A stretch of 64,000 nt of DNA from Perna viridis (GCA_037379345.1 CM074513.1:35956885-36020884); one strand, 5' to 3'; shown: positions 4,133 to 39,052, counted from the stretch's first letter. A program made the numbers and translations. Notes: a model not told the origin generated them from the letters alone.

Positions 4133-4754
4133 CTGTGAAATATGTGTTTAAAGACAAAAATCCAGTACTGAGTCTGGAAAGACTTTCTGCATTCAAATGT
4201 TTTATTTCTTCGAGGTACTATACATGAAATTACCTTTCTTAAAGAACAAATTAGTACGTATTTGAAATAGAGAACAAAACAAAAGCCTAAGGAAACGGTG
4301 TTTCCATTTGCAGTTTCAAGTATTGTTTTGTTGGTGCAAAAAAGTAAATATGGTAATAAAACATTTGGATCTTCCTATTGCATTGTCAGATATTATATAC
4401 AGTTTTGATATTGTATAACTTCATCTTGGTATAAAACTGCTGACTGAAACCACGGGGCAACTGGGTAAGAGAGCAGAACATCTTAATTTTAAAAGTAAAA
4501 ACGCATAGTAAAATAACAACACAATATTTGCACAGTTGACATTAATCTCAAATTATCCCTTGAGCTTCCACCAAAGAACGGGTAAAACATTTCAATCTAA
4601 AGGAAAAGTTACAATTGTAACATAATGCTCCTTTACTTTGTCGGTTTCTCTGAATACGATACTAAACCGAATAACATAATACTATATTAGTTAGGTTTTT
4701 CTTTAAAGTGACTATGTAGATGTACCGCTTTCAACTTGGTCGACAGTAAAAGTA

Positions 4755-6495
4755 AATATAACGAGATTAGGTATGGTGTATATGTCATGCAAAGAGACAA
4801 CAATCTCACCGGGAGATGAAAATATGTCAGCAAGGCCACCCATTGATCTTCGACAATTAAATCCTCATACCACAGGGCAGGCTGCAGCTGGCCTCAAAAC
4901 ATCATTATACACAGGTACAGCGAAGTTGCCCCAATATTCTCAAGTAACATAAAAAATAAACTGAAGGTGAAAACAAAACAAGACATACAGAGGTAAAAAA
5001 ATTCCTGATTAGGGACAGGCGCAAAAAATGCGGCGGAGTTAATCTACTTAAGCGTGATCACAACTCTCCCTCTTTAAAATCTGGCCACTGTGGAAAAAAA
5101 TATTACACAATTAAACACGCCTAAAAATCGGTTCAAGAAGATCTGAGACCCTTGTTACAACGGAAATCAAGGAACTGAATATAGATCAATTATTCCCATG
5201 CGGGGTTGAGAATCACGGTACATCATAAGTCATACAATAAGGATAAAACCCATGTCATGTCAAAAACTGCTTTTAAATACAGTGTTTTAATTTGTATGTA
5301 AAGACCCTATGAGCGAATCAATTTTAATACCAAAAATGCTACCCGCAACGATTTTGCAAGAATATCATAACTATTTCCCTTATGAATGAGCCTATTCAAA
5401 TTATCGAGCTTTCCGTGCTTTGTGTAGAATATTACCGTAAAACAAAGGATGAGAGATACCCCACACACGTATTAATCCTTTACTATTACATCTGTATTTG
5501 AGAGTGAGTTCCTTGTACCGGTTGAAACTTTTGTGAATGGTTTTATGAGCTTGTCATATCGAAAACCTTGATGAAGTAATTTCTCGGTTATATTAAAATT
5601 CCTTTCGATAAATTCCGAAACATAGTTACAATTTAAATACGAGCAAATTTAACCCATTGTGATATGTAAATATCATATGACGGTAACAAGGGGACGCCAC
5701 CATATAAAAACGAATAGTTGACAATAGGGAATCAAAATAGTAAATTTTAGTATTATGTTAAGCATATGAATACCAAGATCAAGAAACGGACATTCTTTAT
5801 TGTCAATATGTGATTTGTTCTAAGACAGTTCTACAGGATTTATATCTTCAGTATAAATATTAAAGTCATTATAATTTAGAGCCAAAATATCGTCCAAATT
5901 TAAAAAGGTGTTATTACCAAATAACCAAATATTTCTACCAAATATTGTTTGGAAGGGTCTTTATTTATTCTAGCCATAAAATGTGACTCGTAACAGTACA
6001 GAAATAGGTCCGAAATAAGTGGTGCACAATTGGTCCCCAATTACAATAACTTGACGATAAACGGTTTCACCAAAGCGTACGAAAATGTTGTCTAACAGGA
6101 ATTCCAGTGCTGTAAGCATACCAAAAGAAGTCCAATTAACGTAGTTTTTATGTTTTCGTTACTAAAAAATGATCGAAACGAATTCGAAAAAATATATTCA
6201 CACCTCTATTTATTAAATGAACATTTGACAAGATATGCGAATTTTTTGTTTTATGAGATTATGTGGAAGTGTAGTGAATAAAAGAGAAAAATCAAAACTT
6301 TGAATAGATTCGAAAGATCACACATGGGCATGTAATTCATTAAAACACTTCAAGTGAGTTTTTAAAACTCCTAAAAGAGTTAATTCCACTATTTTCATAA
6401 GCTTTATTACAAAAATTCATAATTAGATTTTTTATGGTATTGAGCGCAGTAGTAAGTAAAACAGAAAGTTGAGTTGTAGAGCAAGTGGCTGAATT
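4755..6495 (-). mobile_element. Penelope-like retroelement family 2 (Naiad-like, RT at the C-terminus), 5'-truncated and decayed
   Basis: Broken frames give SATCSTTQLSVLLTTALNTIK..SGINS..KNSLEV, SFDFSLY, LLDNIFVRFG..YRQ..GTNCAPLISDLFLYCYES, LDDILALN, FLDL, PIVNYSF..VP..PSY.IYISQ..FAR. The ORF ends near 5287 with no C-terminal GIY-YIG domain. The ~530-nt 3' UTR is homologous to the UTR part of 31330-32031. Confidence 0.85.
4992..5086 (-). ncRNA. Putative circularly permuted (P5-opened) twister ribozyme, decayed copy A
   Basis: GGCCAGA..GAGG-GAGAG-UUG..U^AA-CUCC-GCC-[GCA UUUUU UGC]-G-CCUG-UCCCUAAU-CAGG. Matches the twister core U^AA-P2-GCC-P3-P4-UCCCAAGY-P4' with the P2'-GAGGG strand placed 5'. 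Predicted scissile bond U5041/A5040. Confidence 0.6.
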
Positions 6496-6509
6496 GTGGA
6501 TATTATATG

Positions 6510-7520
6510 GAACAAGATATACTTGATTTCGCAAAGGCGTTCGACAAAGTATCCCACAGCCTATTATTTCACAAACTATCATGCTTTGTATGTGTGATTT
6601 TAGTAGCTTTATGTTCTTTGTTGTATATGTCTGTTTTCCATGTCTGGTCTTTGTCCCTGGATTACATTCTTTTGATTACCGCTATAACCTTGGTTCCCTT
6701 GATTACTCTTTCTATATCACTAATGAATCCGAGGGAAGACAAACCAATTGATATAAGCAGAACACGGAAGTTTCTGTAGGAGAAACATCAGACCAAGTTG
6801 AATCAGGTGTGCCATAAAGACCGACTTATTCCTTCAACTGCGAGACTTTCCGTCCATATTATTGTTTATTTACCATCTTATCCGAAAGTGCTTCCTACCA
6901 GTTCCAGATTTAGACAATCTTACATTATTGGAAGGAAGATGGACAATGAAGTTACATTCAGATAAATGAACAGTACTATCCATGAGTAAAAAGAAAAAAA
7001 AACAATAGAAAGGAAGTACAAACTACATGGACTCATACTCAAATATGAAGCGTCTACCAAATACCTAGGATGCATAATCACTAGTGACTTTGACTGGGGA
7101 GAGCACATCTCAAACGTCATAGATAAAATAAAGCAAGCAGAAGCTTAGAGTTTGTCAACCGTAACCTACATGTAAAATAAAAAACCACCGAATAACAGGC
7201 ATACATTTGTTTAGTAAGACCATAACTCGGTCCTAGTACTGATCGCCACAACAGAATGGGAACCGTACCATCAGACCCAAACAGACAAAGTAAGTAGAGA
7301 AGATACAAAAAAGGGTAGCGAGATTTGAAACCAATCGCCGCAGACAGAGAACTAGTGTAGCTGACATGATAAAAGATTTAGGGTTGAAAAGCCTAGAACA
7401 TGGAAGAAAAGCAGCCAGTCTAATCACTTTCTACAAGATCGTAAACAACATAGTAGCCATAGAAAAAGATACTGTTGCGAAGGTTAAGGCATTCAGAAGA
7501 CCATGCATATACTCAGCAAT
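6510..7520 (+). mobile_element. Decayed non-LTR retrotransposon (CR1/L2-group-like RT), interrupted by a PLE family 1 tail
   Basis: LDFAKAFDKVSHSLLFHKL (6510-6582). After the interruption: KYLGCIITSDFDWGEHI, AYICLVRP, EKIQKRVARF, SVADMIKDLGLKSLEHGRK..FYKIVN. Confidence 0.8.
6583..6712 (+). mobile_element. PLE family 1, 3'-terminal fragment
   Basis: Near-identical to the last ~130 nt of the copies at 9290, 18933, 19933, 38489 and 52819. Ends CCTTGATTACTCTT. Confidence 0.9.
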
Positions 7521-7912: not shown

Positions 7913-10900
7913 TCAATTCGCGGCAGGAGTGGGTTGGAACGATGAGTCAAATTTATTCCAGTTATAGTATGGATATTGTGGTGCAAAACTGTCACTGGAA
8001 TAGTCTGCTTGATCGGCTGGCTGAACAACATTTGGTGCCCCTTGCTGTCCGTTTGGTGCTGGAGGATACATAGCAGTTGAAAATGAAGTAAAAGACGGTT
8101 GGGCTAAAATGAAAAAAACATGACACGATATAAAAACAGTGCTAAAAATTATGTTCGATTCCCGTCTTACATCCGGGACGTTATAAATAATCAAAAACAA
8201 AACATGGGTAACAATTGAGAAAATAACGGTTGCTGATCAGTCAAGTTGCTTGTTTGACTGAAATGTGGATGGGAGTCCGTACAAGACACGGGATGACAGC
8301 TCTTAAAATTGGGCACACATGAACAATAGAAAACGTAAAGAAGTCAGAAATGTCATTATTTATACTTTGGTGCTGGAGGATACATAGCAGTTGAAAATGA
8401 AGTAAAAGATGGTTGGGCTAAAATAAAAACAAAACAAGATATGAATACACTGCTGACGGTATGAATAATCAAAAACTAAACATAGGTAACAGCTGAGAAA
8501 ATAACGGTTGCTAATTGGTCAAATCGCTTGTTGTGCTAAAATTTGGATGGGAGTCCGTTCGAGACACGGGATGGCGACTCTTAAATTAGGCACACATAAA
8601 CAACAGGAAAAGAAAAGAAGTCAAAAATATTATTATTTATGCTTAGAGGAGAAGGTAAATTAAAAAGACATAATTATCTTGTGTATATTTTCGATATTTT
8701 CGATGATAAAACCTAAAACAAATGTTACGGAGACATACGGAGTCGATCGAATATCACAAGGAAACAATATTTCGCGGGTTTGTTTCTACATTGGACGCCT
8801 GTAAATACAAATAAATAAGAAAGATCCTACTACGTTAGCCTTCATAATACCAATAGTTTCGTTATGAAAAAATGAATAGTTTTATTCTCGATATTCTAGA
8901 TAAAGCTTAGAGACCGATAAATTTTTAGGAAAGCTACTACTTGTCTCCTATATCAATAGCAAAATAAAACGTCGTCAAAACTTTAAAAGTAGTGTGTACA
9001 GAAGATGTTTGCATTTATGCCTTTGTCGGTTTTCCTTGTGCGTTAAAATGATTTTGGCTTACCACTAGAATGGATAAGGTAATCAATCGGGATTTAATTT
9101 GTTTAGTGGATCCGAAGTCGTCCTTTTTGTTTAAGGCATTTAAAGTCTTGCAGTGTCTCAGTTAATTATGTAATAGCCATTAGTTTTTACTCGTGTAAAA
9201 TAAAATTTTGAGGGTAAACGTGAGACTGTACTTTATTGTAGGGGCGTTGTCATATTTCCAACGCGTCTTGTTTTATAATATAATCCTCTTTTTTGTATCT
9301 TGCTAGAATTCTAACAAATAGGCTTCTGGAACAGGGTTATGTTGCTACAAGATTGAATGATTAATTCAATGTGTCATAGTTTTCCTTTCCTCGTTTGTCA
9401 ACCCCGGACTTGACTTTTATGAGCAACTCGGCGGGTATTTCTAGAAAAGCAGAGGACGCTTACCCTACCGGTGCACCTGATCTATGCTCCCAGTTTTTAG
9501 TGGAGTCCGAGTTGCTCATTCATGCTTTTGTTACTTTGTATGTATGATTATAGTTACTTTATATTCTTTGTTTTGTATGTCTGTTTTCCATGTCTGGTCT
9601 TTGTTCCTCGATTACATTCTTTTGATTACCGCTATAACCTTGGTTCCCTTGATTATTCTTTGTTTTACCGTACCGTTATATATAAAAACGAAATGATTTC
9701 TTTACCATCTACGCACAGTGAATTGTGTGTATTTGCTCTTGTTTAACATTTTAATCTGGCAATTCTATGTTCTAAGCGATTTTTTTGTCGAGATTGTAGT
9801 ATTTACAGGGCAATACATTGAGAGTTGATGTTTTTTTTATAAAATTAAACTGATTTGATTTTTTCATGCAAATTTACAAGACACAGATTTAATTATACTG
9901 CATCTACAATTCATGTTACATGATGGCGCATTGTAAAATACTTACGAACATTAGCAGGAAGTGACAGACCAGACAACATAGTCCCACCTCCTGAACTCGG
10001 TGCACCGTATTGTTGAGCAGACGATACAAGAGGAATACCTCCTATCATTACCGGAATGGCGACTCGAAGATTTATAGCTGGTCCCGAAGGATCCATTACA
10101 AACTGAAAAGTTACAGAATGTTAAAAAGACTTGTCGGAAATGCATCCATAAAACGACACAAGACATTTATTTTGTCTTTGCAATTTAATTCTCATATTGG
10201 TATATGAATATCCCTAAAAACTCGATTTGTACTTGTGATAAAATTTATCATATATATAACAATCTGCATGAATTGAATTAAGACAAAAATAAAAGGAACT
10301 AAAAAAGTTTATTATTAAGAACATAACACACCTCCATATTCCAAAATTTCGAAATAAAGACGGGCCATAAATGCAATACAAACTATGTATAACCAAAGTG
10401 TTCATGTTTCTTATTGTCCAAAGCAATGTTTTATTATTTAAATAGAAATCAACGCCCGAAACATAAGCAATGACTGACATAACTAGCGAAAATAGTCTAA
10501 ACACGAAAATGACTCTAAATTAAATCTCGTCAATCGGGGAAATAAATGTATCATTCACATTTTATAAAACTATAATATAATTCCTGATATTATGAAAATA
10601 AAAATGTTCCATTGTGTTGTAAAAAGAAAGTTTTTTTTTTAAATTGATAGCAGCGATAAAATTGGTAATTCTTATTTTACATTGCAAGATTAACTCTCTC
10701 ATGAATCTTACCTGCCAAAAATACTGGATGTCTATTATATTACAACCAACCAACCCAGAACCCGGTAAAGGAGGGACAATAATCTGTTCTCCGTCCCAGT
10801 AATCCGAGTCTCCTTTACCTATCTTCCGTTTCGTTGTCTGTGCTACTATAGTGGAAACTGTTCTGGTTTTTCTAGAAGTTATGTATCGGACTCTCTGAAG

Positions 10901-31329: not shown

Positions 31330-32031
31330 ACCTTTTTCTACCGATAAAAGGGACTCGCTCTCAAATACATATGTAAAGAATTAATACGTGCGGGTATCTC
31401 TCATCCTTTGTTTTACGGTAATGTTCTACACATGGTATGACATGGGTTGTGTCCTTATTGTATGACTTATGATGCACCGTGATTATCAACACCGCATGGG
31501 AAGAATTGGTCTTGATTTTACATACGATGGGGACATAACTTTTTTGTAGGTTTAAACTGGCCTGGAGCTGGCTGGCATGTCAAATAACTGCTAGTAGTCC
31601 TTAGTCTGTACATCTGTGTAATTGATATTCACTTTTTTATTTCCGTTGCAACAAGGGACTCGGATCTTTTTGAACTGATTTTAGGTGGGGTTAATTGTGT
31701 AATATTTTATCTACAGTGGCCAGATTTTAAAAGGGAGGTTATATGATAACGCCGAAGTTATTTTACCCTGCCGCATTTTTTAGCCTTCCCAAGTCGGTAA
31801 TTTCTGGCCTCTGTATGTCTTGTTTCGTTTTCACCTTAAGTTTATTTGTTGTTACTTGCGTTTACAGGGGCAACTCTTTCGCTGTACCAGTCTGTAATGC
31901 TGTTTGGGGCCAACTGCAGCCTGTCCTGTGGTATGAGGGTTTCCTCGTCTTTCATTGAAGACCACTGGGCTGACATCCCGGAAGGGTTGTTGTCTCTTTG
32001 ACATATACAAAATACCTATTTTCGTTATATT
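31330..32031 (+). mobile_element. PLE family 2 3' fragment
   Basis: Collinear with the reverse complement of 4755-5530 (LIRAGISHPLFYGNVL, then UTR). Each copy carries a deletion the other lacks. Confidence 0.85.
31718..31809 (+). ncRNA. Putative circularly permuted twister ribozyme, decayed copy B
   Basis: Perfect closing stem GGCCAGA/UCUGGCC; AAGG-GAGGU..UUA-CCCU-GCC-GCAUUUUUUA-GCCU-UCCCAAGU-CGG. The L4 loop is intact; the A following the scissile bond is changed to U (31764). Confidence 0.55.
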
Positions 32032-38488: not shown

Positions 38489-39052
38489 AATGACTTTTCA
38501 TTCACTTTCCTTTCATCGGTGGCAATATCCCTTCAGCACCTGCGTATGGAGTGTTCATATCACAATTCATACGTTATGCCAGAGCTTGCCGAGACTACGC
38601 AGACTTTTTGTATTGCGCTAGAATTCTAACAAAAAGGCTTCTGAAGCAGGGTTATGTTGCTACAAGATCGAGGTCATCACTACAGAAGTTTTATGGCCGT
38701 CATCATGAACTCGTGGATCGTTACGGTGTATCCATCTGCGCCATGAAAACTGATTTGTTCAACGTGTCATAGTTTTCCTTTCCTCTTTCGTCTACCCCGG
38801 ACTTCACTTTTTATGAGCAACTCGGCGGGTGTTTCTAGAAAAGCAGAGGACGCTTACCCTACCGGTGCACCTGGTCCATACTCCCAGTTTTTAGTGGAAT
38901 CCGAGTTTCTCATTTGCTTTTGTTATTTTGTATATATGATTTTGGTTACTCTATGTTCTTTGTTGTGTATGTTTGTTTTCCATCTCCGGTCTTTGTCCCT
39001 GGATTACATTCTTTTGATTACCGCTATAACCTTGGTTCCCTTGATTACTCTT
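38489..39052 (+). mobile_element. PLE family 1 3' fragment (RT thumb and UTR)
   Basis: GNIPSAPAYGVFISQFIRYARACRDYADFL..QGYVATRSRSSLQKFYGRHHELVDRYG, stop at 38772, structure at 38813-38913. Confidence 0.92.

What the first reader, a model, noticed from the sequence alone, without database searches (positions are those of the whole stretch)
4992..5086. Twister-ribozyme-like motif in the 3' UTR of a Naiad-type Penelope-like retroelement (copy A)
Seen: the minus strand reads GGCCAGA-UUUUAAA-GAGG-GAGAG-UUG-(linker)-U^AA-CUCC-GCC-GCA(U5)UGC-G-CCUG-UCCCUAAU-CAGG, about 200 nt after the RT stop. Established: the twister core is U^AA-P2-GCC-(P3)-P4-UCCCAAGC-P4'-(P5)-P2'-GAGGG, with pseudoknots CCC/GGG and GC/GC, and it occurs in P1-, P3- and P5-opened permutations. 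Canonical PLEs carry hammerheads in their UTR/pseudo-LTR, whereas the permuted-domain Naiad clade was described as lacking canonical hammerheads. Inference: this family uses a P5-opened twister as its RNA-processing module in place of a hammerhead. This copy keeps UAA, GCC, P3 and P4 but has substitutions in L4 and GAGGG, so it is probably inactive; the family consensus is the predicted active form. I cannot confirm that the association is unreported.
Basis: partly seen in the sequence, partly recalled or inferred. Interest (0 to 1): 0.9.

Follow-up and report, generated by a model that had tools for sequence, protein, structure and literature searches.

The report
Decayed twister ribozyme in Naiad retroelement
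This is a worn-out copy of a self-cutting "twister" RNA motif in the tail of a Naiad-type Penelope-like jumping gene; better-kept copies in the same genome carry the complete twister core, which suggests what these hammerhead-less elements use instead of a hammerhead.

Summary
This copy is dead. It has at least 7 substitutions at core positions: GAGGG reads GAGAG, L4 reads UCCCUAAU, the P5 3' strand is lost, and P2 has a mismatch.

It belongs to a repeat family with thousands of copies. The majority letters of 28-30 copies restore every conserved twister position in the P5-opened order: AAA-P2'-GAGGG, U^AA-P2-GCC-P3-G-P4-UCCCAAGU-P4', enclosed by a 6+4 bp P5.

A second, short family keeps the same core, with the canonical UCCCAAGC. 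Its P3 and P5 sequences differ but still pair.

Rfam's Twister-P5 model aligns full length but below its threshold (17.8 vs 37.6 bits). There is no P1 helix; two palindromes that covary between the families take its place.

The linked RT has the Naiad DKA motif. Full-length relatives have an N-terminal GIY-YIG domain and a C-terminal RT.

Self-cleavage is not shown. RNA-seq gave no end pile-up, and element boundaries at the predicted site are only suggestive.

I found no paper linking twister to Penelope-like elements. The scan has already noted this motif on other DNA of this genome.

The parts
5081..5091 (-). P5 5' strand (ACAG-U-GGCCAG), intact in this copy
   Evidence: Pairs in 85% of cells over 28 copies. 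Recovered by RNAfold in L021, L019 and L014.
5073..5080 (-). Junction AUUUUAAA. Its final AAA matches the conserved UAAA before P2' in twister.
   Evidence: Invariant or nearly invariant columns. Rfam twister-P1 consensus ...UAAA-P2'-GAGGG.
5069..5072 (-). P2' strand, GAGG here (family majority GGGG)
5064..5068 (-). GAGGG box, mutated to GAGAG here. The change breaks the pseudoknot with the CCC of L4.
   Evidence: Majority GAGGG. The pseudoknot pairs form in 81% of cells.
5042..5063 (-). Linker in the place of P1. It holds palindrome 1 (GUGAUCAC, 5061-5054) and a decayed palindrome 2 (family AAAGUACUUU, 5050-5041). There is no P1 helix.
   Evidence: Family B has GAGCGCUC and AAACAUGUUU at the same places.
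5039..5041 (-). U^AA. The predicted scissile bond lies between U5041 and A5040.
   Evidence: Aligned to UAA of Rfam RF02684 in copy L019.
5035..5038 (-). P2 strand, CUCC here (majority CCCC)
5020..5034 (-). GCC followed by the P3 hairpin (C-GCA / UGC-G, U5 loop), intact
   Evidence: P3 pairs in 91% of cells. Family B has a 6-bp P3 of different sequence.
5004..5019 (-). P4 (CCUG/CAGG) closing L4. L4 reads UCCCUAAU here; the majority is UCCCAAGU and family B has UCCCAAGC.
4987..4997 (-). P5 3' strand. The inner part is destroyed here (UUUACC, majority CUGGCC); the outer CUGU is kept.
   Evidence: RNAfold of the window copy no longer forms P5.
4756..4986 (-). 3' tail of the element, down to its common 3' end ...TCGTTATAT
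   Evidence: Homology with other copies stops at 4756.
5307..6522 (-). Decayed, 5'-truncated reverse-transcriptase remnant. It corresponds to residues ~309-671 of relative P0085.
   Evidence: tblastn; ORF pieces.
31437..32031 (+). Second decayed copy of the same family in the window. It keeps P5 and UCCCAAGU but has lost UAA and part of P4.

Best explanation
Window 5091-4987 (minus strand) is a mutationally dead copy of a type-P5 (P5-opened) twister self-cleaving ribozyme. The ribozyme is built into the 3' region of a high-copy Naiad-type Penelope-like retroelement, about 215-320 nt after the RT stop and about 285 nt before the element's 3' end.

Shown:
- The ancestral sequence of the family has all conserved twister nucleotides and helices P2, P3, P4 and P5, plus both pseudoknots.
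- The core was held constant while the flanks, P3 and P5 diverged with compensation between two repeat families.
- The motif travels as part of the retrotransposed unit.

Inferred:
- In transcripts of source copies the RNA cut itself between U and A of UAA. This would leave a 2',3'-cyclic phosphate on ...AAAGUACUUU and a 5'-OH on AACCCC...
- In the partial-tandem (pseudo-LTR) arrangement typical of Penelope-like elements, such cuts would trim read-through or multimeric transcripts to unit length. That is the role proposed for hammerheads in canonical Penelope-like elements.
- P1 is replaced by two palindromes, so two ribozyme units may need to pair.
For: - Majority letters of 30 and of 28 copies give GGCCAG-AUUUUAAA-GGGG-GAGGG-(22 nt)-U^AA-CCCC-GCC-P3-G-CCUG-UCCCAAGU-CAGG-AAUUU-CUGGCC.
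- The named structure, including both pseudoknots, pairs in 86% of cells against 30-45% for slid controls.
- RNAfold of the natural near-majority copy L021 returns exactly P5, P2, P3 and P4 as both MFE and centroid structure.
- Rfam Twister-P5 aligns end to end (positions 1-58 of 58) on L019 with E=0.09 for that stretch. Twister-P1 aligns the UAA-to-P4' half on family B.
- The 18-letter descriptor finds 149 places against 2 for the reversed control.
- Family B keeps the core with the canonical UCCCAAGC. Its P3 is 6 bp rather than 4 bp and of different sequence. Its P5 is CCACUG..CAGG / CCUG..CAGUGG, where family A has ACAG-GGCCAG / CUGGCC-CUGU.
- Identity between the families is 0.79 in the core, equal to the 0.80 within family A. 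It is 0.39 in P5, 0.50 in the P1 region and 0.35 in the tail.
- Family A copies form a 5'-truncation series reaching into the RT, with one common 3' end.
- Family A copies read VPADKAANN, the DKA motif. Relatives have CxC and DKA. Full-length relatives have GIY-YIG at residues ~40-195 and RVT_1 at ~540-840.
- PMC8557442 gives DKA and CxC as Naiad diagnostics and reports no canonical hammerhead.
Against: - No copy reached an Rfam gathering score: 17.8 vs 37.6 bits and 22.9 vs 67.2 bits.
- RNAalifold on the decayed copies does not recover the fold.
- There is no covariation within the family beyond shuffles, as expected for dead copies.
- Between-family covariation rests on only two lineages, and family B was picked with a pattern that required the core.
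- There is no P1 helix. Family A has U rather than C at the last L4 position, giving a G-U in pseudoknot 2.
- In several copies a competing GGGUU/AACCC helix is the MFE choice.
- RNA-seq reads cover both strands about equally and show no place where molecules begin or end.
- Only about 3-6 of 100 sampled copies have a 5' boundary within 8 nt of the site, and none is clean.
- All examined copies are decayed, so no source copy was seen.
- An N-terminal GIY-YIG domain could not be checked in this family itself.
Confidence: 0.75

Rival explanations
1. The conserved twister-shaped fold is a 3'-end recognition structure for the element's reverse transcriptase, like the shared 3' tails of LINE/SINE partners. 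On this reading it never cleaved, or no longer cleaves.
For: - It lies in the 3' region that the RT-coding family A shares with the short family B. The two families also have homologous 3' tails and similar termini.
- There is no P1 helix.
- No RNA ends appear at the site.
- Genomic copies run about 285 nt past the site, so the retrotransposition template was uncut there.
Against: - Every nucleotide that defines the catalytic core is kept, including U^AA, GAGGG and the L4 letters that form both pseudoknots. Neighbouring helices were free to change sequence.
- A mere protein-binding fold would not be expected to coincide with the whole twister consensus.
Confidence: 0.12
2. The twister belongs to an independent short non-autonomous element (family B-like). 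It was captured once in the 3' UTR of one Naiad lineage, so the link to Naiads is secondary and says nothing about Naiad biology.
For: - Family B copies have no adjacent RT.
- Two other Naiad copies in the same window have a different 3' UTR with no twister-like motif.
Against: - In family A the RT, spacer, twister and tail are colinear in many independently truncated copies, so the motif has been part of the mobile unit through its whole expansion.
- Families A and B are homologous along the entire ~400-nt 3' region, not only in the ribozyme. That fits B being a derivative of a Naiad tail.
Confidence: 0.1
3. It is a chance look-alike with no twister ancestry.
For: - The window copy has no Rfam match.
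- All Rfam scores are below the gathering cut-offs.
- Another twister-like call in this genome was judged a chance look-alike by an earlier follow-up (s1-753427).
Against: - About 22 conserved letters and 14 or more base pairs fall in the right order and spacing.
- They are restored rather than eroded when copies are compared.
- They are held between two diverged families.
- The descriptor gives 149 hits against 2 for the control.
Confidence: 0.03

Closest known systems
Twister ribozyme, type P5 (Rfam RF02684, clan CL00120)
   Same: - Same order of elements: P2' - GAGGG - linker - U^AA - P2 - GCC - (P3) - P4 - UCCCAAGY - P4', closed by P5.
- Both pseudoknots are possible.
- A full-length alignment to the model is obtained.
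   Different: - The score is below the gathering cut-off.
- A P3 hairpin is present where the model has a short loop.
- The P1 hairpin is replaced by a 22-nt linker holding two palindromes.
- Family A has U at the last L4 position.
- The motif is embedded in an animal retroelement.
Twister variants at the 5' end of Perere-3/RTE non-LTR retrotransposons of Schistosoma mansoni (PMC8501958; also PMC7761336)
   Same: - A twister is tied to a retrotransposon.
- The P1 stem is weak or missing but cleavage is retained.
- The proposed role is processing of the element's RNA.
   Different: - Those are type-P1 ribozymes at the 5' terminus of a non-LTR element. They cut the element free from upstream transcript, and target-site duplications form P1.
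- Here the ribozyme is P5-opened, internal, and in the 3' region of a Penelope-like element, about 285 nt from the 3' end.
Hammerhead ribozymes in the pseudo-LTRs of canonical Penelope-like elements (Cervera and de la Pena 2014; Lunse et al. 2017, as cited in PMC6765202 and PMC8557442)
   Same: - Same kind of host element and same position near the 3' end/pLTR.
- Possibly the same need to pair two units: those hammerheads cleave as dimers, and here palindromes stand where P1 should be.
   Different: - A different ribozyme class.
- Naiads were reported to lack canonical hammerheads, and Rfam finds none in the window or in 20 loci.
Computationally found and tested type-P1 twisters of many animals, bivalves included (CHiTA, PMC11662667)
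   Same: Twister ribozymes exist in bivalve genomes, and natural twisters tolerate many imperfections.
   Different: That survey covered type-P1 permutations only and does not discuss a retroelement context.

Membership tests
Twister ribozyme (type P5) | Cleavage-site U^AA directly followed by the 5' strand of P2 | tested here: met
   UAA is present in the window copy and in most copies. It aligns to UAA of RF02684.
Twister ribozyme (type P5) | P2 helix (about 4 bp) between the strand after UAA and the strand before GAGGG | tested here: met
   Family majority CCCC/GGGG; 82% of cells paired. The window copy has CUCC/GAGG, with one A-C mismatch and one G-U.
Twister ribozyme (type P5) | GAGGG box whose GGG pairs with the CCC of L4 (pseudoknot 1) | tested here: met
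   Met in the family majority and in family B. NOT met in the window copy, which reads GAGAG.
Twister ribozyme (type P5) | L4 loop UCCCAAGC closed by P4, with its GC pairing to the GC of GCC (pseudoknot 2) | tested here: met
   Family B has UCCCAAGC. Family A has UCCCAAGU, giving a G-U. The window copy has UCCCUAAU, so it is not met there. P4 pairs in 93% of cells.
Twister ribozyme (type P5) | P5 formed by the outermost strands (the open helix of this permutation) | tested here: met
   Family A has GGCCAG/CUGGCC plus ACAG/CUGU. Family B has a different sequence that also pairs. It is destroyed in the window copy.
Twister ribozyme (type P5) | P1 helix next to the cleavage site | tested here: not met
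   No conserved pairing exists between the strand after GAGGG and the strand before U^AA in either family. Two palindromes occupy the place. P1 is reported to be dispensable, although cleavage is then inefficient (PMC8501958).
Twister ribozyme (type P5) | Score at or above Rfam's gathering cut-off | tested here: not met
   17.8 vs 37.6 bits (RF02684). 22.9 vs 67.2 bits (RF03160). Nothing at gathering level in the window or in 20 loci.
Twister ribozyme (type P5) | Site-specific self-cleavage giving 5'-OH and 2',3'-cyclic phosphate ends | not testable with these tools
   RNA-seq showed no end pile-up. Genomic boundaries near the site are only suggestive.
Naiad clade of Penelope-like elements | DKG motif changed to DKA | tested here: met
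   Family A copies read VPADKAANN. Relatives P0023, P0085 and P0141 have DKA. The criterion comes from PMC8557442.
Naiad clade of Penelope-like elements | CxC motif in the linker before the RT | tested here: inconclusive
   Relative P0023 has CQC...HGHIVTG. Decayed family A copies align there, with a stop in the first position of the motif.
Naiad clade of Penelope-like elements | GIY-YIG endonuclease N-terminal to the RT, with none at the C-terminus | tested here: inconclusive
   Five full-length relatives have GIY-YIG at residues ~40-195 and RVT_1 at ~540-840. In family A there is no room for a C-terminal endonuclease, since the RT stop lies about 216-320 nt before the twister. The N-terminus of family A could not be fetched.
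Naiad clade of Penelope-like elements | No canonical hammerhead ribozyme | tested here: met
   No Rfam hammerhead in the window or in 20 family loci at gathering level.

The most novel reading that the evidence does not exclude
Some Naiad retroelements carry a twister in which P1 has been replaced by two self-complementary boxes that covary between families: GUGAUCAC to GAGCGCUC, and AAAGUACUUU to AAACAUGUUU. The central, adjacent letters of each box also stay complementary. A hairpin cannot use adjacent letters, but a duplex between two RNAs can. On this reading the ribozyme cuts only when two units pair, for example in tandem transcripts. That would be convergent with the dimer-dependent hammerheads of canonical Penelope-like elements, and it would make unit-length or circular RNAs part of Naiad replication.
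Probability: 0.25. Interest if true: 0.8.

Novelty: new variant of a known kind. Interest (0 to 1): 0.65.

Why it matters
- Naiads are among the most abundant retroelements of marine invertebrates. They were described as the Penelope-like clade that does without hammerhead ribozymes, which left the role of ribozymes in these elements in doubt (PMC8557442).
- If at least some Naiad families carry a different self-cleaving ribozyme at the same place, RNA self-cleavage would look like a recurrent requirement of this replication style rather than a hitch-hiker.
- It would add a second retroelement class, after RTE/Perere-3, that uses twister. It would also be a eukaryotic type-P5 twister without P1.
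- It gives concrete natural sequences for a cleavage assay.
- The window copy itself is an inert relic.

Tried and rejected
- Rfam at gathering level on the window and on 20 loci: nothing.
- Rfam family search over the whole genome: only 79 of 8367 candidates were scored, so it is uninformative.
- Pfam on the short open RT pieces: nothing.
- Search for an intact ORF of the family: none among 12 + 30 loci; all are decayed.
- RNAalifold on 28 decayed copies: a weak, different fold.
- Covariation within the family: equal to shuffles, as expected for dead copies.
- RNA-seq (raw-read run X11 and three contig sets) laid on copy L006 at 80% likeness: reads on both strands, a shallow dip around the site, and no place where molecules begin or end. 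This gives no support and is no evidence against.
- Test for copies that begin at the cleavage site: about 3-6 of the 100 listed places have unrelated sequence within 8 nt upstream, all ambiguous because the last family letters are T's. L095 begins at -1, and an upstream fragment in L016 ends at +1. This is suggestive only.
- RNAcofold of whole units: the dimers formed by trivial strand swapping, which is uninformative.
- Other Naiad copies in the window (20224 minus, 38763 plus): no twister-like motif in their tails.
- No full-length consensus of the element or its RT was built.

Full report
**Observation.** The elements, in order, are:
- P5 5' strand ACAG-U-GGCCAG (5091-5081)
- AUUUUAAA (5080-5073)
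- GAGG (5072-5069)
- GAGAG (5068-5064)
- a 22-nt linker (5063-5042)
- U^AA, with the predicted bond between U5041 and A5040
- CUCC (5038-5035)
- GCC and a 4-bp P3 hairpin (5034-5020)
- CCUG-UCCCUAAU-CAGG (5019-5004)
- a T-rich stretch where the P5 3' strand should be (4997-4992), followed by CUGU (4990-4987)

Rfam finds nothing in the whole window at gathering level. It finds no twister on 4700-5400 even at E<=10. Taken alone, this copy is not recognisable as a ribozyme.

**The repeat family.** The stretch is one copy of a repeat with at least 2826 first-look candidates in a 723-Mb, 46-contig genome of about 33% G+C. Copies share a sharp 3' end...TCGTTATAT at window 4756. Their 5' ends are scattered from about 100 nt to more than 1500 nt upstream of the motif, running into the RT. 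This is the pattern of target-primed reverse transcription with 5' truncation, so the motif is part of the mobile unit. The window copy is about 85% identical to others here and 76-81% in the RT region. It has a ~108-nt deletion at 5187/5186. No intact ORF was found among 42 loci, so the family is old.

**What the copies say about the motif.** The majority letters of 30 copies and of 28 copies restore the complete twister consensus in the P5-opened order: GGCCAG, AUUUUAAA, GGGG, GAGGG, a 22-nt linker, U^AA, CCCC, GCC, C-GCA/UGC-G with a U5-6 loop, CCUG, UCCCAAGU, CAGG, AAUUU, CUGGCC. A further ACAG/CUGU extension lies across a U-U mismatch.

I named this structure, including both pseudoknots (GGG of GAGGG with CCC of L4; GC of GCC with the last two letters of L4). 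With it, 86% of 739 cells form standard pairs, against 30-45% when partners are slid by 1-3 columns. Within the family there is no covariation beyond shuffles. That is expected, because these are dead copies decaying neutrally, so the within-family test is silent rather than negative. RNAalifold on the decayed copies fails to find the fold. RNAfold on single near-majority natural copies does find it. For L021 both the MFE and the centroid structure are exactly P5 (5+7 bp), P2, P3 and P4 (-38.8 kcal/mol, z -1.96). L019 and L014 give P5, P3 and P4. The window copy has lost P5.

**Rfam.** Twister-P5 (RF02684) aligns end to end (positions 1-58 of 58) on L019. L019 has a one-base deletion in GAGGG. 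The score is 17.8 bits, against a gathering score of 37.6, with E=0.09 for that 161-nt search. On ten short loci the twister-P1 model aligns the half from UAA to P4' at 17-23 bits, against a gathering score of 67.2. The shortfall is explained by the inserted P3 hairpin and the missing P1. It remains a failed criterion and I report it as such.

**A second family.** A descriptor of only the invariant letters (GAGGG, TAA, GCC, TCCCAAG with spacers) finds 149 places in the genome, against 2 for the reversed control. Besides family A it picks up a distinct family B. Family B compares with family A as follows:
- It has the same GGGG-GAGGG, U^AA-CCCY-GCC and CCUG-UCCCAAG-CAGG blocks.
- Its L4 is the canonical UCCCAAGC.
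- Its P3 is 6 bp (C-ACAUA/UAUGU-G) rather than 4 bp.
- Its P5 is CCACUG..CAGG with CCUG..CAGUGG.

RNAfold recovers P5, P3 and P4 in its copies. Family B copies have no adjacent RT. They are nonetheless homologous to family A along the whole ~400-nt 3' region, including a similar terminus.

I counted identity over all A-by-B pairs of natural copies:

| Region | Between A and B | Within A |
|---|---|---|
| 36 core columns | 0.79 | 0.80 |
| P5 strands | 0.39 | 0.81 |
| P1 region | 0.50 | 0.86 |
| 3' tail | 0.35 | 0.62 |

So the core was held fixed while everything around it diverged, and the helices changed sequence but kept pairing. There are two caveats. Family B was selected with a pattern that required the core, which inflates its side. 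And two lineages are few.

**No P1.** Neither family can pair the strand after GAGGG with the strand before U^AA. Instead both have two palindromes there: GUGAUCAC and AAAGUACUUU in A, GAGCGCUC and AAACAUGUUU in B. Rarer variants have GUGCAC, GAAUUC, CAACGUUG and AAACUAGUUU. Four symmetric pairs differ between A and B with palindromy preserved. These include the central adjacent letters, which a hairpin cannot pair. This points to a duplex between two molecules (duplex energies -8 to -14 kcal/mol) or to a DNA-level site. Hammerheads of canonical Penelope-like elements are reported to cleave as dimers (Lunse et al., cited in PMC6765202). P1 is reported to be dispensable for twister, though cleavage is then inefficient (PMC8501958). 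This is a lead, not a result.

**The host element.**
- RT remnants lie at 6522-5307 on the minus strand.
- A search of 1.8 billion representatives with a 165-residue open piece found 563 relatives.
- Three longer relatives carry CxC-type and DKA motifs.
- Family A copies themselves read VPADKAANN and align weakly to the CxC region.
- A second search found many relatives of 850-1000 residues. Five that I scanned have GIY-YIG at residues ~40-195 and RVT_1 at ~540-840. This is the permuted order that defines Naiad/Chlamys.
- PMC8557442 names CxC and DKA as practical Naiad diagnostics. It states that Naiads lack canonical hammerheads, that bivalve genomes are dominated by Naiads, and it never mentions twister.
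- The N-terminus of family A itself could not be fetched.

**Is it cut in vivo?** One raw-read RNA-seq run and three contig sets were laid on copy L006 at 80% likeness. About 2458 reads map, on both strands in similar numbers. There is a shallow dip around the site but no position where molecules begin or end. Most reads will come from read-through of dead copies, so this neither supports nor refutes cleavage.

I also sampled 100 of 288 places that keep the 16 letters after the site. About 3-6 have unrelated sequence starting within 8 nt upstream. This is perhaps above the ~1.6% expected from the spread of 5' ends, but every case is ambiguous. One copy (L095) begins at -1, and one tandem junction (L016) ends at +1.

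**Literature.** Twister variants are known at the 5' end of RTE/Perere-3 non-LTR elements (PMC8501958, PMC7761336). Type-P1 twisters have been predicted and tested in many animals, bivalves among them, without retroelement context (PMC11662667). Searches for twister together with Penelope-like, Naiad, pLTR, mollusc or bivalve found no paper that links twister to Penelope-like elements. The library is incomplete, so this is absence in what could be searched.

**Earlier notes of this scan.** The same motif has been flagged on several other pieces of this genome. Two follow-ups reached the same reading, palindromes included. I treat them as leads. Everything above was tested here independently.

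**Verdict.** The window copy is an inert relic of a type-P5, P1-less twister that is an integral part of a Naiad-type Penelope-like element's tail and of a related short repeat. Catalysis and biological role remain inferred. The motif is not universal among Naiads, even within this window.

I built no consensus of the element or of its RT, and I propose natural copies for the bench tests.

Noticed in passing
window 5061-5054 and 5050-5041 (minus); L074-L081, L092, L093, L094: Two palindromes stand where twister P1 should be. They change between families while staying palindromic: GUGAUCAC to GAGCGCUC, GUGCAC or GAAUUC; AAAGUACUUU to AAACAUGUUU or AAACUAGUUU. This may be a dimerisation signal.
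   Followed up: partly
L074-L081, L084-L091 (family B; e.g. G000:C4:40638393, C3:3111424): A short repeat without an adjacent RT carries the same twister core with the canonical UCCCAAGC. Its 3' tail is homologous to that of the Naiad family. It is probably a non-autonomous partner. L077 meets the whole descriptor.
   Followed up: partly
L016:1250-1499; L095:242-8: In L016 a partial copy ends 1 nt after the predicted cleavage site and is followed 5 nt later by another copy. L095 is a copy that begins at position -1. These are possible traces of cut RNA being copied.
   Followed up: partly
L021, L019, L014, L074, L077 (ribozyme region): A competing helix, GGGUU (end of GAGGG plus UU) with AACCC (cleavage-site AA plus P2), is often the MFE choice. 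It would mask the active site. It may be an alternative inactive conformer.
   Followed up: no
window 20803-20224 (minus) and 38497-38763 (plus), with tails to ~19900 and ~39050: Two copies of another Naiad family (47-61% identical to relatives at the C-terminus) share a different 3' UTR with no twister-like motif. Fragments of that UTR also lie at 6507-6779 and 9484-9696.
   Followed up: partly
G000:C2:33970283, C3:54725542, C1:19277821, C3:12459138 (places listed): Several copies have internal deletions within the palindrome-bearing linker just upstream of the cleavage site. In C2:33970283 the first palindrome is joined straight to the last letters of the second.
   Followed up: no
L006:1290-1870 (RNA-seq): The family is present in RNA-seq at similar depth on both strands. 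The commonest differences are C>T and G>A, consistent with CpG decay among many transcribed dead copies.
   Followed up: no
loci L045-L073: RT matches contain many in-frame TGA codons alongside TAA and TAG. I did not examine this here.
   Followed up: no
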